From Convolutriloba macropyga (lineage: Eukaryota), in assembly GCF_964194025.1 (NCBI RefSeq), contig NC_134468.1, positions 86,056,001 through 86,120,000 on the forward strand: a DNA stretch of 64,000 nucleotides. The letters run 5' to 3'. This document shows positions 7,321 through 45,248 of this stretch, piece by piece. The notes beneath the pieces are model-generated. The model made no database searches. It saw only the letters and a program-made list of their open reading frames with translations, and was not told the DNA's origin. A program made the position numbers and the translations under genes. Position 1 is the first letter of the stretch. Each line of letters begins with the position of its first letter.

Positions 7321-7356
7321 TTTTAATTATCTTGAACATTCAACACACCACAAGTT

Positions 7357-23703: not shown

Positions 23704-23843
23704 ATGTCTCTATTGTTGAACAACCGTGGGCTGCCTCCAACTGTGAGTTGGAAACAGTTTTTGCCCAAAAGCCCTACGAAGAGAAGAGAGAAGCGTGGAC
23801 ACAGGAAGCTTTTCATAGCACCTGCACTCATACAAAAAAGCAG
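23704..23843 (+). CDS. EXOSC6: Exosome complex component MTR3, exon 1
   Basis: MSLLLNNRGLPPTVSWKQFLPKSPTKRREKRGHRKLFIAPALIQKS-AG|GTAACA. The phase-2 donor joins A-GGC-TCC to give KSRGSCYVECG, matching the RNase PH N-terminal R..R....R...GS.Y.E pattern. Confidence 0.85.
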
Positions 23844-25024: not shown

Positions 25025-25127
25025 TTTTTTACTTTTAAATATGTAATTGAAGGTGAATAGAGTGGAACTAAAATACGGCGCTCAAGTCCTGAATGGACAG
25101 TTTTTTTCAAGTATTTGAGTAATTTTT

Positions 25128-25615
25128 AATAGCCGCCGTCAGCCTCTCAAAGGGCTATTTTTAAGGCGCTCATTTTTTTAATATTCCGCTGTTCATTTTG
25201 ATCACGTTTTTTGTTTTACATGAGTCAGGATTTGTACGTTTGACATCTGACTTACTTTACTCACTGTTTCAACTGAATGGACTTTTAAATTCTTTCGTGC
25301 ATTGAATTACGAAACAGTGAATCAAAACAGACGTGATAAACGGATGAAGCCCGGTCATTAGGTCATTGAAAATTAGGTTATCAAAGTTTATTAGAGAGTT
25401 TGCTAGCTGACATTGGTATTAAGCTTATTAAGGTTTCAGTTTAGAAGCTGAATTAAGAATGATGTTAGAATCCGACTGAAACTGCGCGACAAATTAAAAC
25501 ACTTTGACTCTAAAAAAAAAGAAAAATTCGGTCAATTTATTTTTTCTTTCTGTTTCAATCCCGATGTGATCAAGCCCGTCAACGGCGGCTATTTTCTGGC
25601 AACCTGTCGGCTATG
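25128..25615 (+). mobile_element. HINE/DINE-1-like element, family A
   Basis: AATAGCCGCCGTCAGCC...GCGGCTATTTTCTGGCAACCTGTCGGCTATG. Confidence 0.75.
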
Positions 25616-28600
25616 GTGTTAGTCCTTTTGGTGTTTTTTTACATAGATTTTTTGCGTGAGATTTTTTGTCTGACCTATTTGACTTTTCGTCTTCAAAAAC
25701 GAGATAAACAGGTAGCGCCCAGCGGGCATTAAGTTCTCTTAGATGTCTTTAGCTCACTAGTCTCCAATTATGCGCGTAAGAGAAATTGTGTTGAGACTTA
25801 TTTTTATGATTTATTTTTATGACTTATTATTCTTCTCAAAACCAACTATTATGTATTGCAATCTTTCTGTGCCACTTCATTCCAAGATCAAACAGGAAAT
25901 TAGTGCATATGTTGAAATTTCTTAGTAATTTTGTTTTAATTTGATTACTGAGGTATACACTAAGCCGATGGCTAATAAAGTCAATATCATTTTCAACCGT
26001 TTCAATATATATTAATTATGTGACTTTCAAAGTTAAATCAATAATAAAATCACGATTTTAATGATTTTTTCCAAAACGTTAAAACAGATACAACACAAGA
26101 ACCACTTACGGGTTGAAAAAAATCCTATCTCCATTGAATAAAATAAAGTATGTGCAATAATTTTTTTTAAAATAAAGCTCTGGCAGAGAAAAATAAAGCT
26201 GTGACAGAGTGCTCTTTACAAGATTATCAGCAAAATAATCTCTTACTAACAATATCAACCATTTTATTACCATCACTGCTATCACTAACCATCTCATAGT
26301 TAAAACAATTGCATGACATATAACACCATCAACAGCAGCTTCAAATTCAGAACTAAGTTGTATTGGCTGTGGTCCTATATATTCACTTTGATATCTAGTC
26401 TCAGATATTTATAATCTACGATTACTTTCAATTGTTTTATTATTTATATATGGTTTATTATAAAGTAATCCATTATGATTTTGATTAAGATTCACTATCT
26501 CTTTAAACACCTCATTATAATTTAGTTCCATAATCTATATTCATCCTATCTTCGGGATAAAACTCACTGCCGATCTTACACTAACAGTCAGTAACTTCCA
26601 TTATTTTAAATAAACATGCATCTTTATCTTGTACCTTAACATTATTCTTCTCAAAACCAACTATTATGTTTTGCAATCTTTCTGTGCCACTTCATTCCAA
26701 GATCAAACAGGAAATTAGTGCATATGTTGAATTTTTTTAGTAATTTTATTTTAATTTGATTACTGAGGTATACACTAAGCCGATGGCTAATAAAGTCAAT
26801 ATCATTTTCAACCGTTTCAATATATATTAATTATGTGACTTTCAAAGTTAAATCAATAATAAAATCACGATTTTAATGATTTTTTTCCAAAACGTTAAAA
26901 CAGAAACAACACAAGAACCACTTGCGGGTTGAAAAAAAATCCTATCTCCATTGAATAAAATAAAGTATGTGCAATAATTTTTTTTAAAGTAAAGCTCTGG
27001 CAGAGAAAAATAAAGCTGTGACAGAGTGCTCTTTACAAGATTATCAGCAAAATAATCTCTTACTAACAATATCAACCATTTTATTACCATCACTGCTATC
27101 ACTAACCATCTCATAGTTAAAACAATTGCATGACATATAACACCATCAACAGCAGCTTTAAATTTAAAATTTAAGTTGTATTGGCTGTGGTCCTATATAT
27201 TCACTTTGATATCTAGTCTCAGATATTTATAATCTACGATTACTTTCAATTGTTTTATGATTTATATATGGTTTATTATAAAGTAATCCATTATGATTTT
27301 GATTAAGATTCACTATCTCTTTAAACACCTCATTATAATTTAGTTCCATAATCTATATTCATCCTATCTTCGGGATAAAACTCACTGCCGATCTTACACT
27401 AACAGTCAGTAACTTCCATTATTTTAAATAAACATGCATCTTTAACTTGTACCTTAACATTATTCTTCTCAAAACCAACTATTATGTTTTGCAATCTTTC
27501 TGTGCCACTTCATTCCAAGGTCAAACAGGAAATTAGTGCATATGTTGAATTTTTTTAGTAATTTTATTTTAATTTGATTACTGAGGTATACACTAAGCCG
27601 ATGGCTAATAAAGTCAATATCATTTTCAACCGTTTCAATATATATTAATTATGTGACTTTCAAAGTTAAATCAATAATAAAATCACGTTTTTAATGATTT
27701 TTTTCCAAAACGTTAAAACAGAAACAACACAAGAACCACTTACGGGTTGAAAAAAAATCCTATCTCCATTGAATAAAATAAAGTATGTGCAATATTTTTT
27801 TTTAAAATAAAGCTCTGGCAGAGAAAAATAAAGCTGTGACAGAGTGCTCTTTACAAGATTATCAGCAAAATAATCTCTTACTAACAATATCAACCATTTT
27901 ATTACCATCACTGCTATCACTAACCATCTCATAGTTAAAACAATTGCATGACATATAACACCATCAACAGCAGCTTTAAATTTAAAACTTAAGTTGTATT
28001 GGCTGTGGTCCTATATATTCACTTTGATATCTAGTCTCAGATATTTATAATCTACGATTACTTTCAATTGTTTTATGATTTATATATGGTTTATTATAAA
28101 GTATTCCATTATGATTTTGATTGAGATTCACTATCTCTTTAAACACCTCATTGTGAGTATTAGTTCCATAATCTATATTCATCCTATCTTCAGGATAAAA
28201 CTCACTGCCGATCTTACACTAACAGTCAGTAACTTCCATTATTTTAAATAATTATGCATCTTTAACTTGTACCTTAACATTTTCTCCTCAAAACCAACTA
28301 TTATGAATTGCAATCTTTCTGTGCCACTTCATTCCAAGATCAAACAGGAAATTAGTGCATATGTTGAATTTTTTTAGTAATTTTATTTTAATTTGATTAC
28401 TGAGGTATACACTAAGCCGATGGCTAATAAAGTCAATATCATTTTCAACCGTTTCAATATATATTAATTATGTGACTTTCAAAGTTAAATCAATAATAAA
28501 ATCACGTTTTTAATGATTTTTTTCCAAAACGTTAAAACAGAAACAACACAAGAACCACTTACGGGTTGAAAAAAAATCCTATCTCCATTGAATAAAATAA

Positions 28601-29610
28601 AGTATGTGCAATATTTTTTTTAAAATAAAGCTCTGGCAGAGAAAAATAAAGCTGTGACAGAGTGCTCTTTACAAGATTATCAGCAAAATAATCTCTTACT
28701 AACAATATCAACCATTTTATTACCATCACTGCTATCACTAACCATCTCATAGTTAAAACAATTGCATGACATATAACACCATCAACAGCAGCTTTAAATT
28801 TAAAACTTAAGTTGTATTGGCTGTGGTCCTATATATTCACTTTGATATCTAGTCTCAGATATTTATAATGTACGATTACTTTCAATTGTTTTATGATTTA
28901 TATATGGTTTATTATAAAGTATTCCATTATGATTTTGATTGAGATTCACTATCTCTTTAAACACCTCATTGTGAGTATTAGTTCCATAATCTATATTCAT
29001 CCTATCTTCAGGATAAAACTCACTGCCGATCTTACACTAACAGTCAGTAACTTCCATTATTTTAAATAATTATGCATCTTTAACTTGTACCTTAACATTT
29101 TCTCCTCAAAACCAACTATTATGTATTGCAATCTTTCTGTGCCACTTCATTCCAAGATCAAACAAGAAATTAGTGCATATATTGAATTTTTTTAGTAATT
29201 TTATTTTAATTTGATTACTGAGTTATACACTGAGCCGATGGCTAATAAAGTCAATATCATTTTCAACAGTTTTACCATTCACTCAGTTACGCAAATTTTT
29301 TATTTAACGACTCTTTTAACCCACTAGATATACCTCGGTTTTCAGTTGTTTTGATACTAATTTATTGTAATCTTAATACGTGTAGTTGGCTCTAGATTCT
29401 ATAGCCTATCCGAATACATAGAGGAGGATTAAAATCTGGAAAATTACGCCATACCCTATCTTAAATACGGGGTCCTCACCCCCTCCCCGTGCTGATCTCT
29501 CCACCTATATTCTACTGACGCAAAACAACGGCATTTGACAGATTATTAATGCTCCTCTTAGAGTATCTTAGAGGTTGTTATTTACTATTCTTAATTGATA
29601 GTCTATTCAG

Positions 29611-29813
29611 AGGCTCCTGTTACGTAGAATGTGGAAACACGATAGTAGTGGCTGCTGTGTATGGCCCTCGTGAGAACTTGAAGAGTGATGTGAATGTGAT
29701 GGAGGGAAAACTATCCTGTCAATTTGTGATTAGCCCTTTTGCAACTGTGCCAGGTGAACAGGCCACAACAGCAGGGGCTGTTAATGAAAGAGAGACGCAA
29801 AAACTTTGTGCAG
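29611..29813 (+). CDS. EXOSC6: EXOSC6 exon 2, copy 1 (open frame, K>I variant)
   Basis: TTCAG acceptor, 203 nt, GSCYVECGNTIVVAAVYGPRE..., GTAGAG donor. Confidence 0.55.
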
Positions 29814-31308
29814 GTAGAGAATAAATTTATCCCGGATTCGAAATCGTTTGAGGGCAAATCGCGGGAAGTTGGTAGGTTTTGTTTTTGAATATCAGATTTG
29901 GCGATCTTTTCCTTTAATTAGATTTATAATATGAAAAGTTGACCTCAAACTGTTTTTTTTCCATTTTTGCTGTTCTGCCTTGAATCACTCCTTTGGTCGC
30001 TGGCGTGATTAAAAAAACGTTCAACTTGTGCTTAAATATTTTGGTCTTAGAACTCTGGTCAAGTTTTCAAATAGCAGTAGTGGGTTATTTGTGCTATGCG
30101 ACCACGAAACGAAAGATGATTGCATAGCACATATTGCCCACTACTACCCTAATTTTGAAAAACTAAATACGAAATGTATACTAATTAAGTGACTTTCAAA
30201 GTTAAATCAATAATAAAACCACGATTCTAATGATTTTTTTCCATAACGTTAAAACAGAAACAACAGGAACACTTACGGTTTAAAAATCCTATCTCCATTG
30301 AATAAAATAAAGTATGTTTGCAAAATTTTTTTTGAAAAATAAAGCTGAGACAGAGCGCTCTTTACAAGATTATCAGCAAAGTCATTATCTCTTACTAACA
30401 ATATCAACCATTTTATTACCATTACTGCTAACACTGACCATCTCTTAGTTAAAACAAATGCATGACATATAACATCATCAACAGCAGCTTCAAATTCAGA
30501 ACTAAGTTGTATTGGCTGTGGTCCTATATAATCACTTTGATATCTAGTCTCAGATATTTATATTCTACGATTACTGTCAAATGTTTTATGATTTATATAT
30601 GGTTTATTATTGTAAAGTTATCCATCATAATTTTGATTAAAATTCATTATCTCTTTAAACACATTGTAATTATTAGTTCCATAATCTATATTCGTTCTAC
30701 CTTCGGGATAAAACTCACCGCCAGTCTTACACTAACAGTCAGTAACTTCCATTATTTTAAGTAAACATGCATCTTTAACTTGTACCTTAACATTCTTCTT
30801 CTCAAAACCAACTATTATGAATTGCAATCTTTCCGTGCCACTTTACTCCAAGGTCAAACAAGAAATTAGTGCATATATTGATTATTTTTAGTAATTTTAT
30901 GTAAATTTGATTACTGATGTATACACTAAGCCGATGGCTAATAAAGTCAAAATCATTTTCAACAGTTTTACCATTTACTCAGTTACGCAAATTTTTTATT
31001 TAACGACTCTTTTAACCCACTAGATATACCTCGGTTTTCAGTTGTTTTGATACTAATTTATTGTAATATCTTAATATTTGTAGGTGGCTCTAGATTCTGT
31101 AGCCTATCCGAATACATAGAGCAGGATTCAAATCTGGAAAATTACGCCATACCCTCTCTTAAATACGGGGTCCTCACCCCCTCCCCGTGCTGGTCTCTCC
31201 AACTATTTTTTACTGACGCAAAACAACGGCATTTGACAGATTTTTAATGCTCCTCTTAGAGTATCTAAGAGGTTGTTATTTACTATTCTTAATTGATAGT
31301 CTATTCAG

Positions 31309-31510
31309 AGGCTTCTGTTACGTAGAATGTGGAAACATGATTGTAGTGGCTGCTGTGTATGGCCTTCGTGAGAACTTGAAGAGGGATGTGAATGTGATGG
31401 AGGGAAACTATCCTGTTAATTTGTGATTAGATCTTTTGCAACTGTGCCAGGTGAACAGGCCACAACAGCAGGGGCTGTTAATGAAAGAGAGACGCAAAAA
31501 ATTTGTGCAG
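31309..31510 (+). pseudogene. EXOSC6: EXOSC6 exon 2, copy 2 (frameshifted pseudo-exon)
   Basis: 1-nt deletion (GGAAACTA vs GGAAAACTA) plus S>F and P>L changes. Confidence 0.85.
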
Positions 31511-33911
31511 GTAGAGAATAAATTTATCCAGGATTCGAAGTCGTTTGAGGGCAAATCGCGCGAAGTTGGTAGGTTTTGTTTTCGAATATCAGATTTGGCG
31601 ATCTATTCCTTTAATTAGATTTATAATATAAAAAGTTGACCTCAAACTGGTTTTTTCCATTTTTGCTGTTCTGCTTTGAATCACTCCTTTGGTCGCTGGC
31701 GTGATTAAAAAAACGTTTAACTTGTGCTTAAAGATTTTGGTCTTAGAACTCTGGTCAAAATTTTCAAATGGCAGTAGTGAGTTATTTGTGCTATGCGACC
31801 ACGAAACGAAAGATGATTGCATAGCACATATTGCCCACTACTACCCTAATTTTGAAAAACTAAATACGAAATGTAAACTAATTAAGTGACTTTCAAAGTT
31901 AAATCAATAATGAAATCACGATTCTAATGATTTTTCCATAACGTTAAAACAGAAAAAACAGGAACACTTACGGTTAAAAAATCCTATCTCCATTGAATAA
32001 AATAAAGTATGTTTGCAAAAAATTTATTTGAAAAATAATCAAAGCTGAGACAGAGCGCTCTTTACAAGATTATCAGCAAAGTCATTCTCTTACTAACAAT
32101 ATCAACCATTTTATTACCAGTACTGCTAACACTAACCATCTATTAGTTGAAACAAATGCATGACAAATAACATCATCAACAGCAGCTTCAAATTCAGAAC
32201 TAAGTTGTATTGGCTGTGGTCCTATATAATCACTTTGATATCTAGTCTCAGATATTTATAATCTACGATTACTTTCAATTGTTTTATGATTTATATATGG
32301 TTTATTATAAAGTAGTCCATTATGTTTTTGATTAAGATTCACTATCTCTTTAAACACCACATTATAATTATTAGTTCCATAATCTATATTCATCCTATCT
32401 TCGGGATAAAACTCACTGCCGATCTTACACTAACAGTCAGTAACTTCCATTATTTTAAATAAACATGCATCTTTAACTTGTACCTTAACATTGTTCTTCT
32501 CAAAACCAACTATTATGTATTGCAATCTTTCCGTGCCACTTGACTCCAAGGTGAAACAAGAAATTAGTGCATATATTGATTATTTTTAGTAATTTTATGT
32601 AAATTTGATTACTGAGGTATACACTAAGCCGATGGCTAATAAAGTCAATATCATTTTCAACAGTTGTACCAATTACTCAGTTACGCAAATTTTTTTTTAA
32701 CGACTCTTTTAACCCACTAGATATACCTCGGTTTTCAGTTGTTTTGATACTAATTTATTGTAATATATTGTATACTAATTAAGTGACTTTCAAAGTTAAA
32801 TCAATAATGAAATCACGATTCTAATGATTTTTTTCCATAACGTTAAAACAGAAAAAACAGGAACACTTACGGTTAAAAAATCCTATCTCCATTGAATAAA
32901 ATAAAGTATGTTTGCAAAAATTTTTTTGAAAAATAATCAAAGCTGAGACAGAGCGCTCTTTACAAGATTATCAGCAAAGTCATTCTCTTACTAACAATAT
33001 CAACCATTTTATTACCAGTACTGCTAACACTAACCATCTATTAGTTGAAACAAATGCATGACAAATAACATCATCAACAGCAGCTTCAAATTCAGAACTA
33101 AGTTGTATTGGCTGTGGTCCTATATAATCACTTTGATATCTAGTCTCAGATATTTATAATCTACGATTACTTTCAATTGTTTTATGATTTATATATGGTT
33201 TATTATAAAGTAATCCATTATGATTTTGATTAAGATTCACTATCTCTTTAAACACCATATTATAATTATTAGTTCCATAATCTATATTCATCCTATCTTC
33301 GGGATAAAACTCACTGCCGATCTTACACTAACAGTCAGTAACTTCCATTATTTTAAATAAACATGCATCTTTAACTTTTACCTTAACATTATTCTTCTCA
33401 AAACCAACTATTATGTATTGCAATCTTTCCGTGCCACTTGACTCCAAGGTGAAACAAGAAATTAGTGCATATATTGATTATTTTTAGTAATTTTATGTAA
33501 ATTTGATTACTGAGGTATACACTAAGCCGATGGCTAATAAAGTCAATATCATTTTCAACAGTTGTACCAATTACTCAGTTAGTTACGCAAATTTTTAGTT
33601 TAACGACTCTTTTAACCCACTAGATATACCTGGGTTTTCAGTTGTTTTGATACTAATTCATTGTAATATCTTAATACGTGTAGGTGGCTCTAGATTCTAT
33701 AGCCTATCCGAATACATAGAGGAGGATTAAAATCTGGAAAATTACGCCATACCCTATCTTAAATACATGAGAGTCCTCGCCCACTCCCCTTGCTGGTCTG
33801 TCCACCTATATACTACTGACGCAAAACAACGGAATTTGACAGATTATTAATACTCCTCTTAGAGTATCTTAGAGGTTGTTATTTACTATTCTTATTTGAT
33901 AGTCTATTCAG

Positions 33912-34114
33912 AGGCTCCTGTTACGTGGAATGTGGAAACACGAAAGTAGTGGCTGCTGTGTATGGCCCCCGTGAGAACTTGAAGAGTGATGTGAATGTGA
34001 TGGAGGGAAAACTATCCTGTCAATTTGTGATTAGCCCTTTTGCAACTGTGCCAGGTGAACAGGCCACAACAGCAGGGGCTGTTAATGAAAGAGAGACGCA
34101 AAAACTTTGTGCAG
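33912..34114 (+). CDS. EXOSC6: EXOSC6 exon 2, copy 3 (open frame)
   Basis: AG/GT bounded, 203 nt, GSCYVECGNTKVVAAVYGPRE...TAGAVNERETQKLCA. Confidence 0.6.
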
Positions 34115-35684
34115 GTAGAGAATAAATTTATCCAGGATTCGAAATCTCGTTTGAGGGCAAATCGCGCGAAGTTGGTAGGTTTTGTTTTTGAATATCAGAT
34201 TTGGCGATCTTCTCCTTTAATTAGATTTATAATATAAAAAGTTGACCTCAAACTGCTTTTTTCCATTTTTGCTGTTCTGCTTTGAATCACTCCTTTGGTC
34301 GCTGGCGTGATTAAAAAAAACGTTTAACTTGTGCTTAAATATTTTGGTCTTTGAACTTTGGTCAAAATTTTCAAATGGCAGTAGTGGGTTATTTGTGCTA
34401 TGCGACCACGAAACGAAAGATGATTGCATAGCACATATTGCCCAAATTTTGACAACCTAAATACGAAATGTATACTAATTAAGTGACTTTCAAAGTTAAA
34501 TCTACCCTACCATACTACCCTAATTTTGAAAAACTAAATACGAAATGTATACTAATTAAGTGACTTTCAAAGTTAAATCAATAATAAAATCACGATTCTA
34601 ATAATTTTTCCATAGCGTTAAAACAGAAACAGCAGGAACACTTACGGTTTAAAAATCCTATCTCCATTGAATAAAATAAAGTATGTTTGGAAAATTGTTT
34701 TTGAAAAATAAAGCTGAGACAGAGCGCTTTTTACAAGATTATCAGCAAAGTCATTATCTCTTACTAACAATATCAACCATTTTGTTACCAGTACTGCTAA
34801 CACTAACCATCTATTAGTTGAAACAAATGCATGACAAATAACATCATCAACAGCAGCTTCAAATTCAGAACTAAGTTGTATTGGCTGTGGTCCTATATAA
34901 TCACTTTGATATCTAGTCTCAGATATTTATAATCTACGATTACTTTCAATTGTTTTATGATTTATATATGGTTTATTATAAAGTAATCCATTATGATTTT
35001 GATTAAGATTCACTATCTCTTTAAACACCACATTATAATTATTAGTTCCATAATCTATATTCATCCTATCTTCGGGATAAAACTCACTGCCGATCTTACA
35101 CTAACAGTCAGTAACTTCCATTATTTTAAATAAACATGCATCTTTAACTTGTACCTTAACATTATTCTTCTCAAAACCAACTATTATGTATTGCAATCTT
35201 TCCGTGCAACTTTACTCCAAGGTCAAACAAGAAATTAGTGTATATATTGATTATTTTTAGTAATTTTATGTAAGTTTGATTACTGAGGTATACACTAAGC
35301 CGATGGCTAATAAAGTCAATATCATTTTCAACAGTTGTACCAATTACTCAGTTAGTTACGCAAATTTTTAGTTTAACGACTCTTTTAACCCACTAGATAT
35401 ACCTGGGTTTTCAGTTGTTTTGATACTAATTCATTGTAATATCTTAATACGTGTAGGTGGCTCTAGATTCTATAGCCTATCCGAATACATAGAGGAGGAT
35501 TAAAATCTGGAAAATTACGCCATACCCTATCTTAAATACATGAGAGTCCTCGCCCACTCCCCGTGCTGGTCTGTCCAACTATATACTACTGACGCAAAAC
35601 AACGGAATTTGACAGATTATTAATACTCCTCTTAGAGTATCTTAGAGGTTGTTATTTACTATTCTTATTTGATAGTCTCTTCAG

Positions 35685-35887
35685 AGGCTCCTGTTACGTG
35701 GAATGTGGAAACACGAAAGTAGTGGCTGCTGTGTATGGCCCCCGTGAGAACTTGAAGAGTGATGTGAATGTGATGGAGGGAAAACTATCCTGTCAATTTG
35801 TGATTAGCCCTTTTGCAACTGTGCCAGGTGAACAGGCCACAACAGTCGGGGCTGTTAATGAAAGAGAGACGCAAAAACTTTGTGCAG
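35685..35887 (+). CDS. EXOSC6: EXOSC6 exon 2, copy 4 (open frame, A>V variant)
   Basis: AG/GT bounded, 203 nt, ...TTVGAVNERETQKLCA. Confidence 0.55.
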
Positions 35888-37388
35888 GTAGAGAATAAAT
35901 TTATCCAGGATTCGAAATCGTTTGAGGGCAAATCGCGCGAAGTTGGTAGGTTTTGTTTTTGAATATCAGATTTGGCGATGTTCTCCTTTAATTAGATTTA
36001 TAATATAAAAAGTTGACCTCAAACTGTTTTTTCCATTTTTGCTGTTCTGCTTTGAATCACTCCTTTGGTCGCTGGCGTGATTAAAAAAACGTTTAACTTG
36101 TGCTTAAATATTTTGGTCTTAGAACTTTGGTCAAAATTTTCAAATGGCAGTAGTGGGTTATTTGTGCTATGCGACCACGAAACGAAAGATGATTGCATAG
36201 CACATATTGCCCACTACTACCCTAATTTTGAAAAACTAAATACGAAATGTATACTAATTAAGTGACTTTCAAAGTTAAATCAATAATAAAATCACGATTC
36301 TAATGATTTTTTTCCATAGCGTTAAAACAGAAACAACAGGAACACTTACGGTTTAAAAATCCTATCTCCATTGAATAAAATAAAGTATGTTTGCAAAATT
36401 TTTTTTGAAAAATAAAGCTGAGACAGAGCGCTTTTTACAAGATTATCAGCAAAGTCATTATCTCTTACTAACAATATCAACCATTTTATTACCATTACTG
36501 CTAACACTAACCATCTCTTAGTTAAAACAAATGCATGACATATAACATTATCAGCAGCAGCTTTAAATTCAGAACTAAGTTGTATTGGCTGTGGTCTTAT
36601 ATAATCACTTTGATATCTAGTCTCAGATATTTATATTCTACGATTACTATCAAATGTTTTATGATTTATATATGGTTTATTATTGTAAAGTTATCCATCA
36701 TAATTTTGATTAAAATTCACTATCTCTTTAAACACATTGTATTTATTAGTTCCATAATCTATATTCATCCTACCTTCGGGATAAAACTCACCGCCAATCT
36801 TACACTAACTGTCAGTAACTTCCATTATTTTAAGTAAACATGCATCTTTAACTTGTACCTTAACATTCTTCTTCTCAAAACCAACTATTATGTATTGCAA
36901 TCTTTCCGTGCCACTTTACTCCAAGGTCAAACAAGAAATTAGTGCATATATTGATTATTTTTAGTAATTTTATGTAAGTTTGATTACTGAGGTATACACT
37001 AAGCCGATGGCTAATAAAGTCAATATCATTTTCAACAGTTGTACCAATTACTCAGTTAGTTACGCAAATTTTTAGTTTAACGACTCTTTTAACCCACTAG
37101 ATATATCTGGGTTTTCAGTTGTTTTGATATTTATTTATTGTAATATCTTAATACGTGTAGGTGGCTCTAGATTCTATATCCTATCCGAATACATAGAGGA
37201 GGATTCAAGTCTGGAAAAATACGCCATAACCTATCTTAAATACATGAGAGTCCTCGCCCACTCCCCGTGCTGGTCTGTCCACCTATATACTACTGACGCA
37301 AAACAACGGAATTTGACAGATTATTAATACTCCTCTTAGAGTATATTAGAGGTTGTTATTTACTATTCTTATTTGATAGTCTATTCAG

Positions 37389-37591
37389 AGGCTCCTGTTA
37401 CGTGGAATGTGGAAACACGAAAGTAGTGGCTGCTGTGTATGGCCCCCGTGAGAACTTGAAGAGTGATGTGAATGTGATGGAGGGAAAACTATCCTGTCAA
37501 TTTGTGATTAGCCCTTTTGCAACTGTGCCAGGTGAACAGGCCACAACAGCAGGGGCTGCTGATGAAAGAGAGACACAAAAGCTGTGTGCAG
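37389..37591 (+). CDS. EXOSC6: EXOSC6 exon 2, copy 5 (probable primary copy, followed by unique intron sequence)
   Basis: AG/GT bounded, 203 nt, ...TAGAADERETQKLCA; phase 1 joins exon 3 (G|AT). Confidence 0.85.
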
Positions 37592-37992
37592 GTAGGGAAT
37601 CAGGTTTTCCATGATTTCCAAATTGTGGAACGTTCCCTGTAAAAATGATAGGTATTTTAACACGTTAAATTGTTCACACATGGTAAAGGAAATAAAAATC
37701 TCACGGGGGAAAGGATGGAAAGTTCAGTTCCAAATTCTCATACGATTTCATAATATGCGTTCTTAACGGTGTTTTTACTACGTTGCTTCCCGATGTTGTT
37801 TTTAACTTCAATCATGAGAACTAAATTTTGCAGATTTTTGGTGCCGTACATTTTCAAAGATTTTGGTTGATAATTTTGACAATTAGGAACCGAAGACCGA
37901 CTTTTTATGATGACTTTTTTTAATTTCCTTTAATTGATTACTTTTTTTCTCAGTACTGATAGAGGTGTGATTTTTTTGAAACGATGTTACAG

Positions 37993-38237
37993 ATTACGAG
38001 TCCTTTGTGGAGGAATGTTTCTGCTCAGTTGTAGATCGGACCAAGTTTCCCAAGTCTACTCTTGATCTGACTGTGCTGGTATTGGAGAATGATGGAGGCG
38101 TACTGGCCCAGTCTCTCACTGCCCTCTCCTGTGCAATAACAAATGCTGGAATTGAGATGCACGATCTCTTAATTGGAGTGAACTCTGCCGTTTTGACCAA
38201 GGATTGGACAAATGATGATAGTCAATCTGATGCAGAA
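37993..38237 (+). CDS. EXOSC6: EXOSC6 exon 3
   Basis: TTACAG acceptor; FPKSTLDLTVLVLENDGGVLAQSLTALSCAITNAGIEMHDL is the RNase PH core; GTTAGT donor at 38238. Confidence 0.93.
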
Positions 38238-38392
38238 GTTAGTTTTTCTTCATGTTATTAGTGAGCTGTATTGTCACAGGTTTGTTTACACCATCTAGAA
38301 AGGTTTTGAATATTTTTGAGAGGGCGATGACAGCCCTTTTTAATCATTTTTTTTTTTTGAGGTTACAGAAATGTAAGTGAATTCAACATTTT

Positions 38393-38805
38393 AATTGCTC
38401 TGGAACGAATTTTGAAGTAATTGTTGTACACGTGTTTGTCTTTTTATGCAAAATTTTTTGCTTCACCGTTTTCTTCTAGAATATTTTTGGATTTCACTTC
38501 TTGAGTGAATTTACACGAGTGTGTTTTTGATATTTTGCGGGACCTAATTTCATCTTATCGAGTACCGAGAAATTAAGTTTTGGTTGTTATTAAATCAAAA
38601 GCGATTGTAAGCTAGGAGAGCAAAAAGGCCAGACAGCAGAGTGGTAAATGCTTCAGTTTATAACGGAGCATGTCAAGGATCCGAATCCCGCCTTGGTGAG
38701 ATTTTTTTGCACCCATAAAGAATATTTTCTTTGCTACAGCGCCGTTTGATTAATTTTCCCCGCCTGTCATTCAAGAGCGATTTGTCTGATATTAGTCAGT
38801 GTATG
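38393..38805 (+). mobile_element. HINE-like element, family B, with tRNA-like core 38628-38698
   Basis: AATTGCTCTGGAACGA ... CATTCAAGAGCGATT subTIRs; 3' hairpin CTGA-TATTAG-TCAG; D-arm GCAGAGTGGTAAATGC. Confidence 0.65.
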
Positions 38806-38950
38806 TTTTGTTGACTAAACGACAAATTTCTGTCATTCTTCATATAGCAATAGTGGCTAGAAAAGATTTGACCTTTTAATGCAATTTGTACGCATCGTGT
38901 AATCAGTTTATCGCCTAACACACAGTAGAAGGGATTTAAATTATCTGTTT

Positions 38951-39371
38951 GATAGCCACACTGCGATAGCTGGGACTATTATTGGACGTCCTCTTGGTTT
39001 TTTGTGGTCAAGATTTTTGTTAAGACCATATGACGTCACAGGCACTTGAAATCTGCCTTTTGTTCATTCGTTCATGCAATTTCAACAGAAGTGTGTGCGT
39101 GACGTCATTTCTCACTCTGAGTGGAGCGAGTTTTTTGTTCATTCGCGTATAAGGTCAAGTGAATGTGTGTCAATCTAAATGAAGTTTGAGAACAGCTAAT
39201 AGAGGTAGCAATAACTTATACAGATTCATAATCTGTATAATATCTCACTGTATAAATCTTTTGGTCTGTCTTTACTGTTTTTACACTGCAGATCTTTTAA
39301 ATCTTTTACTGTTTTTAGACTGCAGATCCACGAAGCTAATGTGGCTATTTTCTGGCAATCTGTCAGCTATG
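38951..39371 (+). mobile_element. HINE/DINE-1-like element, family A (duplicate at 44287-44681)
   Basis: GATAGCCACACTGCGATAGCTG...GTGGCTATTTTCTGGCAATCTGTCAGCTATG. Confidence 0.7.
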
Positions 39372-39477
39372 TTAAGTGAGAGCTCATCCTTACTTACAGA
39401 CTTCCCGGAGGCAGGGGATCGAATTATCGATCGTTGGCGTGTCAATCACACGCCTTAACTCTCGGCTATGACGCCAC
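39372..39477 (-). mobile_element. tRNA-derived SINE (other copies 44682-44787 minus and ~62190-62300 plus)
   Basis: Minus strand reads GTGGCGTCATAGCCGAGAGTTAAGGCG (A box)...ATTCGATCCC (B box), with a tail GATGAGCTCT.ACTTAAC shared by the 62190 copy. Confidence 0.6.
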
Positions 39478-39613
39478 TGTTTCTTAGTTTCAATACCCAA
39501 TGGGTTTTTTAGGAACTATATCCGAAAAAAGAAAACTTGAACAGTTAAAATTATACTAAGTTTTTTGATCGCATTGTAAACGTTAGAATTACAGTCGCAA
39601 TTTTGTTTTGATT

Positions 39614-40125
39614 AATAGCCGCCGTCAGCCTCTCAACTGCTATTATTTTGGCGCTTTTTTAATTCGCTTTACCGTTTGATCACGTTTTTTTGTTCTTAAG
39701 TCTCGATTTTCTTGATTGACTTGATTTACCTCACTCACTTGTTCAACTGAATGGATTTTAAATTCTTTCACGGATTGAATTACGCAATGTAGTGAATACG
39801 GTCAAAGTCAAAAGATCAAAATCAAAAGAAACAGGGTAAGCATTAAGGCCGGTCATTAAGTCATAGTGCATTAGGTTATCAAAGTTCATTAAAGTGATTG
39901 ATAGCTGGCATTAGAATTATGCTTAATAGCGTTCCGTATAGAAGTTGAATTAAGTGTAATTTAGGAATCTAGCCGAATATGCAGAATTTGCACACCAAAT
40001 AAAAAAGTTTTGACACTTAAAAATATTATGTCAATTTCTCTCTTATTCTTCTCTTTTTCTGTTTCAATCCTAATGTGCGCCAAGAGGGTAAACAGCGGAT
40101 TTTTTTTGGCAATTTGCCGGCTATG
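39614..40125 (+). mobile_element. HINE/DINE-1-like element, family A
   Basis: AATAGCCGCCGTCAGCC...TGGCAATTTGCCGGCTATG. Confidence 0.7.
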
Positions 40126-40428
40126 TTTGACTTATAAACGTTTACAACATTTTTCTAGTACACTTTGTGCGCAATGAATTTTTGAGCATCGTGTAATCAA
40201 ACAATACTAATTGAAATTTAGATTTCCCGGTCTCATCACACAATTAATGAATGCAACTAAAACGAAAACTAAAAGTTAAAATTTTACAAGGATATTGGTC
40301 GTACCGTAAACGTTAGGTTTCTATTCGCAATTTTGATTTTTGTCGTGCCTGATCGGACCTTAAGCCTCTAGATTCCTGCTGTTAATTATACTGTTGTTTA
40401 CTCTTTGTCAAGCTGAATGGATGTTTAG

Positions 40429-40710
40429 GAAACATGTGAATACTCAATAGACCCTTGCTTTAATGATGAAACAATTAATTACGACAACGAACCCGACCAA
40501 TCAACGGCTGATGATCAACGTACATTATCGGTAGTAACTATCGGCTATCTTCCGAATGTGAATCAAATTGCAACTCTTAACCACCTGGGCCAGTGTCCTT
40601 CAGCAGAAGTGCTCTCAACAGCTGTCAAAAAATTCATTGAGAGTTGCCCACAAGTCTATGCTGCCGTCCAAACCTTTTTGAAACAAGATGCCCAAAATGA
40701 AAATATTTGA
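40429..40710 (+). CDS. EXOSC6: EXOSC6 terminal exon, copy 1 (gene about 289 aa)
   Basis: TTTAG acceptor, phase 0. ETCEYSIDP...VVTIGYLPNVNQIATL..LG...LSTAVKKFIESCPQVYAAVQTFL..stop matches the MTR3 C-terminus (DP; TVA.MP.LNQV; GC..LY..LQ..L). Confidence 0.88.
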   Translation, partial: ETCEYSIDPCFNDETINYDNEPDQSTADDQRTLSVVTIGYLPNVNQIATLNHLGQCPSAEVLSTAVKKFIESCPQVYAAVQTFLKQDAQNENI

Positions 40711-41542
40711 GAGAGTTTGTGTTTTCTATCGTTTATAGTTGAATGAACTATTAGAGAAGTATCTGGCTATGACTATGTCTTTTGTTTACTGATATCTGAT
40801 AGAATTTTAGTGTTCACATCTACTTTTTACTATTCACAGTGTCTTTTTTAATCAGTACTTTTGTTGGAGTGAAATTGGAGCTGAAATGACATTGAAAATG
40901 AGAGCGATTAGTTCCTCTTTAGTCAGTATTATATCTTTCATAAGGGATCAGGACATTTTTATTGATGAGTTTTGCTGCACGAACGCTGACTTAAGTGCAG
41001 CTTTGGTGAAAAAAAAAACAAATTCAAAGCTTCAAAACTGCACAACTTGTTTTATTAGATCATTTTGTGTTAACAGCAACAGCTACAATACGGGCTTGAT
41101 TTTTCAATTTTTTAAAAGGAAACTATTCTAAAAGTACCTTCAATCTACCTTAACACTCTTGTTTCAATGAAATGCAATTATCCCTCTTACAATTTGCGAA
41201 AACTTAGATTTTGGGGGGTGCTAAATTAACGGCTCTATGGGGGGGGCTAGCAGAAAAGATCAAGTTATTGCAGGTTAAGGAGACCTAAATATTTCCTTGA
41301 AAGAAACTGGATAAAATGGCTACTAATGCTCTAATAGTGCTACCATAAAAGCACGGTTTAAATCTAAAGAATGCTTGAGGAGGCAGATTTTCTTGAAGAG
41401 CGATTCTGCACCTCGTCCTTATTTTAATATCTCCTTCGCTTTTTTCGGGCCCTCTGAGCTAGCTACTCTATGCTCAATGAAACTAAAACCAAAGCCAACC
41501 CCTCCGCTTGAGACCGCTATCTGACGCTAGTCGTTTGTTTGT

Positions 41543-42181
41543 AATAGCCGCGAAGTGATAGCGGCTATTATTGAGGACATCGTGGTTTTTTAATTCGTCG
41601 TTACCATCGATGATTCTTGCGACCTGACTTCTTGGAATTGACTTTTTCAATTTCACTGATTTCTACTGCTTTGCAGTTAAAATTTGTGTGCGTGACGTCA
41701 TTTGTTCTGCTTTTAGGTAAATTGCGTGACTTACCTCACTCACAAAATGACTTCTGAACTCGCTTAATAAACCTTTACTAGTTGTCAATAGTGTGCATCT
41801 AAGTAGTGACAAACGTGTATGCCCTAATTCTTGAGAATTAGAGTCTTGATTTTATGGTTCCGAATATTAATTTTGAAAAAGCTCTATTAGGGTTTTTTAA
41901 AAAGACCACCAGTCCTTTAATAGATTTAATAGACCACTAGACTTTTTGGTTAGATTCAGACTCTCATTTTTATAACACATACGCTCTATAAGCTCAATTT
42001 TGAAAGAGCTTATATAGCGTATGTGTTAAAAAAATGACATTCCGAATCTAAGCAAAGTCTAGTGGTCTATTAAATCTATGAAAGGACTGGTGGTCAATCT
42101 ATCTTATTTCTTTTGTTGTTTCACTTCATAGAAGGCCACAAGCGTCTATCGCGGCTATTTTCCGGCAATCTGTTGGCTATG
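41543..42181 (+). mobile_element. HINE/DINE-1-like element, family A, containing a 192-bp foldback
   Basis: AATAGCCGCGAAGTGATAGCGGCTATT ... GCGGCTATTTTCCGGCAATCTGTTGGCTATG. Confidence 0.7.
41904..42095. repeat. Long inverted repeat (~92-bp arms, 10-nt loop)
   Basis: GACCACCAGTCCTTT...ATAAGCTC-AATTTTGAAA-GAGCTTAT...AAAGGACTGGTGGTC. Confidence 0.9.
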
Positions 42182-42924
42182 TTTGATATCAAATGTTGCG
42201 AAGTATTCCTTTAAGTATATTTATAATGTAATAATAATAAATGTAATAATAATAATTTATCGGGTAAGTCAGCTCGAGATGACTTCAATTTTGTCGCTGT
42301 CTGGATTTGAAGGACTTCGATTTTCGCTGTTTCATTTTGAAAGGCGCCCTGGTCACTGCTCGTGCAATAATAGAAATATGTTCTACTTGTGCTTCTGCTT
42401 GTTGTTCTTAGAATTTCTGTCAACTTTTCAGTTGAAACGCAGATAAAACTCCTCGAGAAACTGTTGAATTTTTGCAGTTGAGAGTGGGCAGATTGCGATT
42501 ATCCAACTTGGGAAAACTTATGTCAAATTAAACACCGCTCTTGAAATTTTTGGTTTAAATTTTGTCTTTCATTTGCGGGATTGTTCCGTTATTGCCCCCG
42601 CCCTCAAGTTTGTTATTCCCTCGTTACAAAATTTGCAATATTGCATGGACAACAAGTGCGCTATTATACTAGCAACGGTTGCGTGATTGTAAATATTTTT
42701 TTACTGCTTAAATTGTTTTTTTTTTTACAATTTATGGAGCGTTTTTCTTTACTTGTGCGATTTTGTGAAAAAACAACATTGAAGCGTTGACACACACTTA
42801 TGTTTTGAGCGTTATTGTCAGTAAAAAAATTATTCGCAATTGGGACCCTGCTAGCTTTTTGAGGCGTTTTTAAGTCAATATAATCTCGTTATTTTATTTT
42901 TGAATGGTTTCTGATTTGCTTGTT

Positions 42925-43197
42925 AATTGCTCTCAAACGAAGTTTTGTAGCAATTATATTGGTCCTGTCGGTCTTTTTATTTATGCGATTTTTATATATG
43001 CAATCATATGCGTTTTTTCTCTTGACCAATTTTTCGTCTGACGCATTTGAATTTTCGACCTCAAAAACGAGATAAACAGGGTAGCTTCCGGCGAGCATTA
43101 AGCTAAAGCTAGCCTGACTAAACCGTGGCTAGCTACTGACGAAGCCAACCGCTCGCCGGTTGTTTGAGAGCAATTCGCCCGACGTTAGTGCGGAATG
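42925..43197 (+). mobile_element. HINE-like element, family B termini with a non-tRNA interior
   Basis: AATTGCTCTCAAACGA ... TTGTTTGAGAGCAATT; interior shared with ~11250-11340 and ~25660-25735. Confidence 0.65.
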
Positions 43198-43289
43198 TTT
43201 TTTGTGTTATTCTAAATGGGACTATTTTGATTTTTTTGTTCAAATTCTTCGCCTACAAGGTTAAATAAGGATTTTCAAAAAAAACTTTT

Positions 43290-43676
43290 ATTTGTTGCTC
43301 CAGCGAAGCAATATTTTTACAAAACTTTTTTTACAAAACATTGCGTTTGATCGTTGCCCTCGAGAAAGTTTTCTCGATCTTACTTTTCGAGTGAATTTTT
43401 CACGCTTGACTGTTTGAATTTTTTCGAGTGCTATGAATTGTGCGGATTCAGAAAAGTCTGTTACTAAAATAAAACCGATTGTTATCGATGACCTTACTTT
43501 GCACTGTGCGTAGTGTCTATGAGCCCGTGTAGCATACTGGCATCCGAGAGGTGGCCGGTTCGAACCCCTCACCAAGTGTTTACCACCATAAAAGTTCCTA
43601 TAGCTATCTATTGTCAACTTAAGTAATTCGCCTCGCCACTCGTTCAAGATCAATTTGTACGTCAGTCGTTTTATGT
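43290..43676 (+). mobile_element. HINE-like element, family B, with a tRNA-like core (~43500-43578)
   Basis: Scaffold AAGTCTGTTACTAAAATAAAACCGATTG, B box GGTTCGAACCC and 3' TCGTTCAAGATCAATT. Confidence 0.65.
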
Positions 43677-44966
43677 TTGTTCAAACATTGAAATGGGGCG
43701 GGTCAAAATAAGTAGTGATAAATATGTTGATAGACTTTGATGTCAATCAATTTTTACTGTGATAGTGTCGACGATTCCACTTCGTTTTTAGATTGTTATA
43801 TAAATCATCTTCACGCGGGGAAAAACCGAAGCTTGAATTCGAACGCGAATGTGCACTTTATAATATGGCAGACGTTACTACCATTACAGCCAGCTTGAAT
43901 TTGTGTAGAGTCCGGGGCTTCTGAAAAATTTCGGCAGCTCGTGAATTTTGATTGGTTGCTAAACCATTTTGTCGAGTTATTGTTACTGCAAAATTAAATT
44001 TTTTGCTTCAAGGATTGAGACCATATAAAACCCTTTTTTCCGTAGGGAACCAGAAGATTATTAATAGTTTGTGGAACATTCTATTATTCGTTTAGGCGCA
44101 ATATTGGTTGAAATTTTTTAGTCCTGCGGAGTAGGGATTTGTTTTGTTGACTAAACGACAAATTTCTGTCATTCTTCATATAGCAATAGTGGCTAGAAAA
44201 GATTTGACTTTTTAATGCAATTTGAACGTATCGTGTAATCAGTTTAGTGCCTAACACACAGTAGAATGGATTTAAATTATGTGTTTGATAGCCACACTGC
44301 GATAGCTGGGACTATTATTGGACTTCCTGTTGGTTTTTTGTAGTCAAGATTTTTGTTAAGACCATATGACGTCACAGGCACTTCAAATCTGCCTTTTGTT
44401 AATTCGTTCATGCAATTTCAACATAAGTGCGTGCGTGACGTCATTTCTCACTCTGAGTGGAGCGAGTTTTTTGTTCATTCGCGTATAAGGTCAAGTGAAT
44501 GTGTGTCAATCTAAATGAAGTTTAATTGAGAACAGCTAATAGAGGTAGCAATAACTTACACAGATTCATAATCTGTATAACATCTCAGTGTATAAATCTC
44601 TTGGTCTGTCTTTTTTTACGGTTTTTAGACTGCAGATCCACGAAGCTATTGCGGCTATTTTCTGGCAATCTGTCAGCTATGTTAAGTGAGAGCTCATCCT
44701 TACTTACAGACTTCCGGAGGCAGGAGATCGAACTATCGATCATTGGCGTGTCAATCACACGCCTTAACTCTCGGCTATGACGCCACTGTTTCTTAGTTTC
44801 AATACCCAATGGGTTTTTTAGGAACTATATCCCAAACTATATCCTAAACGTTAGGTTTCTATTCGCAATTTTGATTTTTGTCGTGCCTGATCGGACCTTA
44901 AGCCTCTAGAATCCTGCTGTTAATTATACTGTTGCTTACTCTTTGTCAAGCTGAATGGATATTTAG

Positions 44967-45248
44967 GAGACATGTGAATACTCAATAGACCCTTGCTTTG
45001 ATGATGAAACAATTGATTACGACAATGAACCCGACCAATCAACGGCTGATGATCAACGTACATTATCGGTAGTAACTATCGGCTATCTTCCGAATGTGAA
45101 CCAAATTGCGACTCTTAACCACCTGGGCCAGTGTCCTTCAGCAGAAGTGCTCTCAACAGCTGTCAAAAAATGCATTGAGAGTTGCCCACAAGTCTATGCT
45201 GCTGTCCAAACTTTTTTGAAACAAGATGCCCAAAATGAAGATATTTGA
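44967..45248 (+). CDS. EXOSC6: EXOSC6 terminal exon, duplicate copy 2 (open frame)
   Basis: TTTAG acceptor, 282 nt, no indels or premature stops; differs from copy 1 by about 10 substitutions. Confidence 0.65.
   Translation, partial: ETCEYSIDPCFDDETIDYDNEPDQSTADDQRTLSVVTIGYLPNVNQIATLNHLGQCPSAEVLSTAVKKCIESCPQVYAAVQTFLKQDAQNEDI

What the first reader, a model, noticed from the sequence alone, without database searches (positions are those of the whole stretch)
29611..37591. Five tandem copies of EXOSC6 exon 2, a possible mutually exclusive exon cluster in formation
Seen: copies at 29611, 31309, 33912, 35685 and 37389 all keep the TTCAG acceptor and GTAG donor. Four are 203 nt with open frames encoding slightly different peptides (NTIVV vs NTKVV; TAGAVNE, TVGAVNE, TAGAADE); copy 2 is frameshifted. 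Since 203 is not a multiple of 3 (phase 2 to phase 1), including two or three intact copies shifts the frame, so one copy must normally be chosen. With two intact terminal exons, up to eight isoforms are possible. Known: tandem exon duplication is the usual origin of mutually exclusive exons; I do not know of it in this core exosome subunit.
Basis: partly seen in the sequence, partly recalled or inferred. Interest (0 to 1): 0.7.

Follow-up and report, generated by a model that had tools for sequence, protein, structure and literature searches.

The report
Exon copies inside an intronic tandem repeat
One of the two chromosome copies of an acoel worm's MTR3/EXOSC6 gene carries five copies of exon 2 because a 1.7-kb tandem repeat in intron 1 took the exon in; the last copy looks like the working exon and the other four look like neutrally drifting decoys.

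Summary
Five copies of a 203-nt RNase PH exon lie at the stated coordinates, and copy 2 is frameshifted. All keep the acceptor and a GT donor. The gene is the MTR3/EXOSC6-like gene of Convolutriloba macropyga (not human).

The duplicated thing is not an exon alone. It is a ~1.7-kb unit (exon + A + B + C) of a higher-order tandem repeat spanning 25826-37623. A B-only block lies upstream.

The array is on one haplotype only. A second contig from the same specimen, and a related acoel, each have a single exon 2 and a single terminal exon.

The annotated protein uses copy 5 and the distal terminal exon. Copy 5 encodes the same peptide as the other haplotype (0 nonsynonymous : 5 synonymous differences). 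Copies 1-4 show a neutral pattern (12:5, plus a frameshift and a stop in copy 2). They also carry K->I at a conserved Lys and a donor +5 G->A.

No docking/selector RNA pairing exceeds chance. No transcript data could be reached.

Verdict: a real, polymorphic tandem exon duplication. It is raw material for mutually exclusive splicing, with no sign that it works as such.

The parts
23704..23843 (+). Exon 1 of the MTR3/EXOSC6-like gene (46 codons + 2 nt; donor CAG|gtaaca)
   Evidence: tblastn of P0002; exact substring of annotated protein P0053; sequence
25826..29610 (+). B-only tandem block (one partial plus four ~815-bp B copies, 0.7-2.9% apart) followed by one C segment. This is the left part of the repeat array in intron 1.
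25826..37623 (+). Whole higher-order tandem repeat. After the B block come four units of [exon 2 + A (~358 bp) + B (~795 bp) + C (~348 bp)]. Unit 2 has an extra B and unit 3 a 77-bp internal duplication. The array ends about 32 nt after copy 5.
29611..29813 (+). Exon 2 copy 1: open, K->I at the conserved GNTKV motif, V/N type 3' end, donor GTAGAG
31309..31510 (+). Exon 2 copy 2: 202 nt, frameshifted, CAA->TAA, 8 nonsynonymous changes of its own; a dead copy
33912..34114 (+). Exon 2 copy 3: open, V/N type 3' end, donor GTAGAG; nt 1-168 identical to copy 5
35685..35887 (+). Exon 2 copy 4: open, extra A->V (GCA->GTC), V/N type 3' end, donor GTAGAG
37389..37591 (+). Exon 2 copy 5: the copy used in the annotated protein. 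Its peptide is identical to that of the other haplotype, and its donor is GTAGGG (+5 G, as in the other haplotype and in a related acoel). It is a mosaic: nt 1-168 are array-type and nt 169-203 are native-type.
36146..36221 (+). Local hairpin (32-nt arms, 12-nt loop) at the end of segment A, present in each unit. It is not a docking/selector pair.
37993..38237 (+). Exon 3 (rest of the RNase PH domain; donor GAA|gttagt)
40429..40710 (+). Proximal terminal-exon copy (E4a), inside the duplicated segment 40307-41051. It is not used in the annotated protein. It has 3 nonsynonymous changes of its own, including C->F at a Cys conserved in four acoel sequences. No AATAAA/ATTAAA occurs within 1 kb after its stop.
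41536..44142 (+). Segment X. On the other haplotype it lies in intron 1 directly upstream of exon 2 (94% identity). Here it lies between the two terminal-exon copies.
44140..44836 (+). Second copy of the intron-3 segment 38804-39527 (94-96% identity). It contains a dispersed repeat also seen at 6820-7867.
44967..45248 (+). Distal terminal exon (E4b), inside the duplicated segment 44845-45580. It is used in the annotated protein and is contiguous with the RINT1 intergenic region as on the other haplotype. The first AATAAA lies at 46038 and is conserved on the other haplotype.

Best explanation
On this haplotype of Convolutriloba macropyga, exon 2 of the MTR3/EXOSC6-like gene lies inside a non-coding higher-order tandem repeat in intron 1. 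The exon carries only 17 nt of its native upstream intron and about 34 nt downstream. Unequal crossing-over or gene conversion within that repeat multiplied the exon to five copies. The same haplotype also carries a second rearrangement: the terminal exon is duplicated and a piece of intron 1 has moved between the two copies. Copy 5 and the distal terminal exon are the working exons. Copies 1-4 and the proximal terminal exon are pseudo-exons that drift neutrally. A productive mRNA needs exon 1 joined to exactly one intact copy, and the annotation uses copy 5. Any second copy shifts the frame into an early stop. I infer, but have not shown, three reasons the allele is tolerated: the decoy donors are weaker (+5 G->A, which also removes a GGG), mis-spliced RNAs would be removed by nonsense-mediated decay, and the other haplotype carries an ordinary single-copy gene.
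For: The whole unit is repeated, not only the exon. B copies form two sub-families, as in higher-order repeats. Exon divergence is close to flank divergence for most pairs: c3-c4 1.0% against 0.9/1.1%, c1-c2 4.5% against 4.0/3.6%, c4-c5 3.4% against 3.4%. A second contig of the same specimen's assembly (L003, 44x) has exon 1, one exon 2, exon 3, one terminal exon and RINT1 downstream. The five-copy contig (L004, 47x) is identical to window 23348-41426. A related acoel contig (L002) has single exons in a compact gene. Homology of the other haplotype to every copy begins at -17. For copies 1-4 it ends near +34. The annotated protein P0053 equals exon 1 + copy 5 + exon 3 + E4b exactly. Copy 5 versus the other haplotype shows 0 nonsynonymous: 5 synonymous changes. 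The decoys show 12:5 plus a frameshift and a stop (Fisher p = 0.0096). Copy 5 keeps the A and D residues shared with the other haplotype and with L002. The +5 G of the donor is shared by copy 5, the other haplotype and L002 but is A in copies 1-4. The coding exons used on this haplotype, compared with the other haplotype, give pN/pS = 0.12.
Against: No transcript evidence could be reached. The annotation may rest on reads from the other haplotype, whose exon 2 and terminal exon resemble copy 5 and E4b most. With the dead copy 2 left out, the substitution contrast is not significant (4:4 against 0:5, p = 0.10). Copy 1 versus copy 3 is more alike in the exon (1.5%) than in the flanks (7.0% and 3.7%). 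The acceptors and upstream 348 nt of all copies are nearly identical. The decoy donors still pair with U1 at -3..+3, so some use of copies 1-4 is expected on first principles. The allelic status of L003 is inferred from synteny, coverage and the single annotated gene. Its synonymous divergence is high (0.13 overall, 0.32 in exon 1).
Confidence: 0.6

Rival explanations
1. A nascent mutually exclusive exon cluster that is already used. Copies 1, 3, 4 and 5 are each chosen singly and give MTR3 variants. Frame incompatibility plus nonsense-mediated decay enforces exclusivity.
For: Four copies are open, with the same length, phases and acceptor. A second copy gives an immediate stop. The copy 1 exon is more conserved than its flanks relative to copy 3. 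The intact decoys show 4 nonsynonymous: 4 synonymous changes, slightly below the neutral 77% nonsynonymous expectation (p = 0.09). Tandem duplication is the accepted origin of such clusters (PMC6071210, PMC9013439).
Against: The array is on one haplotype only and is absent from a related acoel. Copy 2 is dead. Copies 1 and 2 have K->I at a Lys kept in all relatives seen. Exon and flank divergence are mostly alike. No docking/selector pairing exceeds chance. The annotation has copy 5 only.
Confidence: 0.15
2. The array haplotype is a crippled (null or strongly hypomorphic) allele. Most of its transcripts include several exon-2 copies or end in the proximal terminal exon and are degraded. The ordinary allele on the other haplotype supplies the function.
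For: Five near-identical acceptors lie in series. The upstream intron context of copy 5 is itself array-derived. An intact single-copy allele exists in the same animal. The species also buds asexually according to the abstract of bioRxiv 10.64898/2026.03.06.710013. My inference is that this could shelter a recessive defect.
Against: Exon 1, copy 5, exon 3 and E4b are all intact, with pN/pS 0.12 against the other haplotype. Internal divergence of the array (up to 9% in C, 8.7% in B) shows it is not brand new, yet the used exons carry no disabling change.
Confidence: 0.15
3. Assembly artefact: the array is a false expansion of one exon-bearing unit in a highly heterozygous genome assembled from an amplified ultra-low-input HiFi library.
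For: Heterozygosity is 3.65%. The assembly (1176 Mb) is larger than the k-mer estimate (867 Mb). The library was amplified, and mean read length (~8 kb) is shorter than the 11.8-kb array (PMC13650328).
Against: Units differ by 1-9% with a consistent substructure, which is more than read error and involves more than two variants. A second assembly of the reads gives an identical 18-kb sequence. Contig coverage of 47x is like the other haplotype's 44x. The window has no N inside 25826-45580.
Confidence: 0.05

Closest known systems
Mutually exclusive exon clusters born by tandem exon duplication (e.g. Dscam, srp, ATE1; Ivanov & Pervouchine 2018, PMC6071210; Hatje et al. 2017, PMC5740500)
   Same: Tandem homologous exons of equal length and phase with shared splice sites. 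The length is not a multiple of three, so double inclusion is unproductive.
   Different: Known clusters are fixed, usually ancient, and every member is under purifying selection. Many have docking/selector RNA pairings. Here the array is on one haplotype, one copy is dead, the others show a neutral pattern, and no pairing exceeds chance.
Unannotated tandemly duplicated exons found by genome scans (Ivanov & Pervouchine 2022, PMC9013439)
   Same: Extra exon copies lie next to an annotated exon and are absent from the gene model.
   Different: That work adds statistical support for expression from RNA-seq panels. No expression data could be reached here.
Exon-containing intragenic macrosatellites or VNTRs, such as the KIV-2 repeat of human LPA (from my own knowledge, not tested here)
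   Same: A kilobase-scale unit holding exon plus intron is repeated head to tail. Copy number differs between alleles, and units are homogenised by unequal exchange.
   Different: In LPA the repeated coding length keeps the reading frame, so all copies are translated. Here each extra copy breaks the frame.
Out-of-frame intragenic exon duplications known as disease alleles, e.g. in DMD (from my own knowledge)
   Same: Duplication of an exon whose length is not a multiple of 3 is predicted to give a premature stop if both copies are spliced in.
   Different: Those are recent single duplications. Here there is a five-copy diverged array, with the used exons still under constraint.

Membership tests
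EXOSC6 / MTR3 (RNase PH-like ring subunit of the RNA exosome) | RNase PH domain 1 (PF01138) | tested here: met
   Exon 2 copies score E 2e-10 to 3e-11 and exon 3 scores E 2e-6.
EXOSC6 / MTR3 (RNase PH-like ring subunit of the RNA exosome) | Closer to MTR3 than to the other RNase PH-like subunits (RRP41, RRP46 and so on) | tested here: met
   The full-length orthologue P0002 (66% identical to the window's protein) gives human MTR3 E 6e-24 over residues 23-279, human RRP41 1e-12 and RRP46 9e-4. The source name of P0053 is 'MTR3-like'. Exon 2 alone does not discriminate. A joined model built from the window was not searched.
Mutually exclusive exon cluster | Adjacent homologous exons of the same length and phases with usable splice sites | tested here: met
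Mutually exclusive exon cluster | A mechanism that makes inclusion exclusive (frame incompatibility with decay, steric hindrance, incompatible spliceosomes, or competing RNA structures) | tested here: inconclusive
   Frame incompatibility is present. The introns of ~1.5 kb rule out steric hindrance. All sites are GT-AG of one type. No docking/selector complementarity exceeds shuffles (72/100 and 57/100 shuffles reach the observed score).
Mutually exclusive exon cluster | Each member is seen in mRNA, one at a time | not testable with these tools
   No transcript-derived protein of this species is in the searched collections. The only model, P0053, uses copy 5.
Mutually exclusive exon cluster | Members are kept by selection (open, constrained, conserved between individuals or species) | tested here: not met
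   Absent from the other haplotype and from a related acoel. Copy 2 is broken. The decoys show 12 nonsynonymous: 5 synonymous changes against 0:5 for copy 5.
Higher-order tandem repeat (macrosatellite) as a structural variant | Head-to-tail units including non-coding sequence, with sub-repeats and homogenised sub-families | tested here: met
Higher-order tandem repeat (macrosatellite) as a structural variant | Copy number differs between haplotypes | tested here: met
   Five copies on L004/the window against one on L003. That the two are alleles is inferred.
Dispersed transposable element carrying a captured exon | Copies elsewhere in the genome, or a coding or terminal signature of a transposon | tested here: inconclusive
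   No A/B/C copy occurs elsewhere in the window or in L003. The ORF cluster of B has members only on the same 103-kb contig. The repeat ORFs have no Pfam hit. The whole genome could not be searched.

The most novel reading that the evidence does not exclude
A mutually exclusive exon cluster caught at birth and still polymorphic. On one haplotype of an essential exosome gene, copies 1, 3, 4 and 5 would each be spliced in singly at appreciable levels. This would give MTR3 variants that differ at 2-3 residues, with frame incompatibility plus decay as the only enforcing mechanism. The same animal would carry the ancestral single-exon allele as a built-in control.
Probability: 0.12. Interest if true: 0.7.

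Novelty: new member of a known kind. Interest (0 to 1): 0.35.

Why it matters
Tandem exon duplication is the accepted source of mutually exclusive exons, but the earliest stage is rarely seen: a duplication still segregating, before any regulation has evolved. Here one animal carries both the five-copy allele and the single-copy allele of an essential gene. One RNA-seq experiment could therefore show what the spliceosome does by default with a row of near-identical exons. The possible outcomes are choosing the first, choosing the last, including all, or skipping the weak-donor copies. The same data would show how much unproductive splicing an essential gene tolerates. On present evidence it is an ordinary structural polymorphism inside an intronic tandem repeat, not a working splicing device.

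Tried and rejected
**Docking/selector RNA structures**
- The inverted-repeat scan found only a local hairpin inside segment A and AT-rich pairs at chance level.
- An ungapped helix score between the unique array flanks and the unit did not exceed dinucleotide shuffles.

**Transcript evidence through the protein collections**
- Three word searches (one search timed out) returned only genomic ORFs of this species and the one annotated protein.
- Which copy reaches mRNA therefore stays open.

**Is the repeat a transposon?**
- No Pfam hit for the repeat ORFs.
- No copies elsewhere in the window or on the other haplotype.
- ORF clusters are confined to one contig.
- ARAGORN found no tRNA in the window.
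- I rejected exon capture by a dispersed element as unsupported. It is not excluded.

**Does segment A derive from intron 2?**
- Similarity covers only the first ~34 nt. Beyond that it is no better than shuffles.

**Polyadenylation signals as a discriminator of the two terminal exons**
- The result is suggestive only. Finding no hexamer in ~1 kb has a chance probability of about 0.1 at this base composition, by my own estimate.

**Other**
I re-ran it by reference.
Full report
**What the window is**

The window is not human. A protein returned by the word search, P0053, is named 'exosome complex component MTR3-like [Convolutriloba macropyga]'. It is encoded at window 23704-45248. That stretch is chromosome record OZ077299.1 of assembly GCA_964194025.3. 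The fetched locus L001 is identical to the window over 23704-46000.

The N runs at 907-1073 and 47219-47425 were left as they are. L001 covers the place of the second run. I made only a true/false comparison of the whole overlap and a letter-level comparison restricted to 23704-46000. I did not read the letters at the N positions.

Neighbouring genes:
- a peptidase C26 / gamma-glutamyl-hydrolase-like gene at about 8.6-10.6 kb
- a RINT1/TIP1-family gene from 48281
- reverse-transcriptase fragments

Five copies of a 203-nt exon lie at 29611, 31309, 33912, 35685 and 37389. Each is preceded by TTCAG and followed by GTAG.
- Copy 2 has lost one base and also carries CAA->TAA.
- The other two frames of every copy contain stops. 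A second included copy would therefore end translation within about five codons.
- Each copy matches Pfam RNase_PH.

Exon 2 alone does not say which exosome subunit this is. The full-length orthologue P0002, found with the profile-free search, matches human MTR3/EXOSC6 far better than RRP41 or RRP46.

**Gene model**

| Exon | Coordinates |
|---|---|
| Exon 1 | 23704-23843 |
| Exon 2 | five copies, as above |
| Exon 3 | 37993-38237 |
| Terminal exon, proximal (E4a) | 40429-40710 |
| Terminal exon, distal (E4b) | 44967-45248 |

Exon by exon, the translations of exon 1, copy 5, exon 3 and E4b are exact substrings of P0053. Those of copies 1, 3 and 4 and of E4a are not.

I did not build or search a joined spliced model from the window. 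All searches used single exons by reference, or proteins that the tools returned.

**What is duplicated is a repeat unit, not an exon**

The sequence from one exon copy to the next is repeated as a whole at 94-96% identity. A unit consists of:
- the exon
- segment A (~358 bp)
- segment B (~795 bp)
- segment C (~348 bp)

Upstream of copy 1 lie one partial and four full B copies without any exon. Unit 2 has an extra B, and unit 3 has a 77-bp internal duplication. The array runs from 25826 to 37623.

B copies fall into two sub-families:
- 0.7-2.9% divergence within the upstream block
- 0.9-4.6% within the exon-bearing units
- 6.5-8.7% between the two sub-families

This is the pattern of a higher-order tandem repeat that evolves by unequal exchange. 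The repeat has no Pfam-recognisable coding capacity. It has no copy elsewhere in the window. An ORF cluster from B has members only on this one contig.

**The array is on one haplotype**

The cluster of the copy-5 ORF led to an ENA contig-level assembly, ERZ25071359. It holds two contigs for this locus.

- **L004 (47x coverage)** is identical to window 23348-41426, with all five copies.
- **L003 (44x coverage)** carries exon 1, one exon 2, exon 3 and one terminal exon, with RINT1 downstream.

The genome note reports the following (PMC13650328):
- a single specimen
- 3.65% heterozygosity
- a hifiasm primary assembly
- a separately deposited alternate haplotype

I take L003 to be that other haplotype. 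Synteny, similar coverage and a single annotated MTR3-like protein support this, but it is an inference.

A related acoel contig (L002, ENA ERZ25878734; the tool gave no species) also has single exons, in a compact gene. The single-copy state is therefore ancestral.

**Breakpoints**

The other haplotype is homologous to every exon-2 copy only from 17 nt upstream of the exon. Further upstream, identity falls to 23%, which is random. For copies 1-4, homology to intron 2 ends about 34 nt after the exon. Beyond that, segment A is no more similar to intron 2 than shuffled sequence is.

The native upstream intron piece of the other haplotype (L003 7377-9893) lies in the window at 41536-44142, between the two terminal-exon copies. 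Two duplicated segments complete the picture:
- 38804-39527 is duplicated at 44140-44836.
- 40307-41051 is duplicated at 44845-45580.

This haplotype is therefore a complex rearrangement, not a simple exon duplication. I cannot reconstruct the order of events.

**Copy 5 is a mosaic**

| Region | Copy 5 vs copy 3 | Copy 5 vs other haplotype |
|---|---|---|
| Exon nt 1-168 | identical (169/169 aligned columns) | 5 differences |
| Exon nt 169-203 | 5 differences in 35 | identical (35/35) |
| Start of intron 2 | 44/76 identical | 72/79 identical |

The latest homogenisation of the array therefore reached into the exon and stopped near position 168. This is an edge effect, as expected at the border of a tandem array.

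**Which copies look functional**

Copy 5 versus the other haplotype shows 5 differences, all synonymous. By chance alone that has p = 0.0007, given that 77% of random changes would be nonsynonymous.

Changes confined to copies 1-4 are 12 nonsynonymous and 5 synonymous, plus the frameshift and stop in copy 2. That matches the neutral expectation (p = 0.57) and differs from copy 5 (Fisher p = 0.0096). With copy 2 left out, the contrast is 4:4 against 0:5 (p = 0.10), so the case against the three intact decoys is suggestive, not proven.

Further points against the decoys:
- Copies 1 and 2 share K->I in the GNTKV motif. That Lys is kept in every relative seen.
- Copies 1-4 share A->V and D->N. Copy 5, the other haplotype and L002 keep A and D.

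Exon divergence is about the same as flank divergence for most pairs. The exception is copy 1 against copy 3: 1.5% in the exon against 7.0% and 3.7% in the flanks.

For the terminal exon, E4a has 3 nonsynonymous: 2 synonymous changes of its own, including C->F at a Cys shared by four acoel sequences. E4b has 1:4.

Over exon 1 + copy 5 + exon 3 + E4b, computed exon by exon, the two haplotypes differ with pN/pS = 0.12. The exons used in the annotation have therefore stayed under constraint.

**Splice signals**

The acceptors and the 348 nt upstream are array-derived and nearly identical for all five copies. Acceptor choice therefore cannot tell the copies apart.

The donors differ at one informative place:

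| Sequence | Donor |
|---|---|
| Copy 5 and the other haplotype | CAG\|GTAGGG |
| Related acoel (L002) | CAG\|GTGAGA |
| Copies 1-4 | CAG\|GTAGAG |

The conserved +5 G is A in the decoys. From general knowledge of U1 pairing, this weakens a donor but does not abolish it. I expect some use of the decoys.

No AATAAA or ATTAAA lies within 1 kb after E4a. The first one after E4b is at 46038, outside the duplicated segment, and is conserved on the other haplotype. This fits E4a being an incomplete terminal exon, but the absence is only weakly informative.

**Test of the competing-structure model**

Ivanov & Pervouchine (PMC6071210) propose that duplicating one arm of an intronic stem-loop creates selector sequences competing for one docking site. 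Here neither the unique part of intron 1 nor intron 2 pairs with the unit better than dinucleotide shuffles do. In 72 of 100 and 57 of 100 shuffles, the score reached the observed value. The inverted-repeat scan found only a hairpin internal to segment A.

**What could not be done**

No transcript-derived sequence of this species is in the collections I could search.

The annotation is weak evidence. Reads from the ordinary haplotype would map best to copy 5 and E4b.

The synonymous divergence between the two haplotypes is high and uneven: 0.32 in exon 1 and 0.05-0.13 elsewhere. I cannot explain this.

**Verdict**

- The array is real.
- It is a polymorphic tandem duplication of an exon carried inside an intronic higher-order repeat.
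- It has the formal properties from which mutually exclusive splicing can evolve.
- The tested evidence points to one working copy and four decoys.
- No paper linking EXOSC6 and exon duplication was found.

Noticed in passing
window 12713-17843 and 17845-22972: A 5.13-kb segment is repeated head to tail at 99.94% identity, ending about 730 bp upstream of MTR3 exon 1. It has no convincing ORFs. It is either a very recent duplication or an assembly artefact. The second assembly's contig with the array (L004) ends at window 23348, just beside it.
   Followed up: partly
window 38804-45580 (L003 7377-16494 for comparison): The terminal exon and part of intron 3 are duplicated. A 2.6-kb piece that is intron 1 on the other haplotype lies between the two copies. 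The three terminal-exon versions (E4a, E4b, other haplotype) are about equidistant, 3-4% apart, so the duplication is about as old as the haplotype split.
   Followed up: partly
window 23600-24020 against L003 6366-6792: The two haplotypes are only ~80% identical around exon 1 (synonymous divergence 0.32, 5 of 47 residues differ) but 94-97% identical further downstream. This is far more uneven than the genome-wide 3.65% heterozygosity would suggest.
   Followed up: partly
window 9192-9264 (+): Rfam gives a tRNA match above its gathering score (43.7 bits). ARAGORN finds no tRNA anywhere in the window. It may be a tRNA-derived repeat or a pseudogene, and it lies between the peptidase C26-like ORFs.
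   Followed up: no
window 6820-7867, 38949-39373, 44285-44684; L003 6928-7386 and 11458-11709: A dispersed repeat family of about 0.5 kb (77-89% identity between copies) lies at or near several of the rearrangement junctions. One copy sits directly upstream of segment X on the other haplotype, and another directly downstream of X in the window.
   Followed up: no
window 1297-2554 (-) and 46613-47062 (+); L003 1-1914 (-): Retroelement remains are present. One window ORF has an RVT_1 domain. On the other haplotype, a 2281-residue Pao/BEL-type polyprotein lies upstream of MTR3 and is absent from the matching place in the window.
   Followed up: no
window 41904-42095: A 192-nt stretch matches its own reverse complement at 88% (a palindrome) inside relocated segment X.
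   Followed up: no
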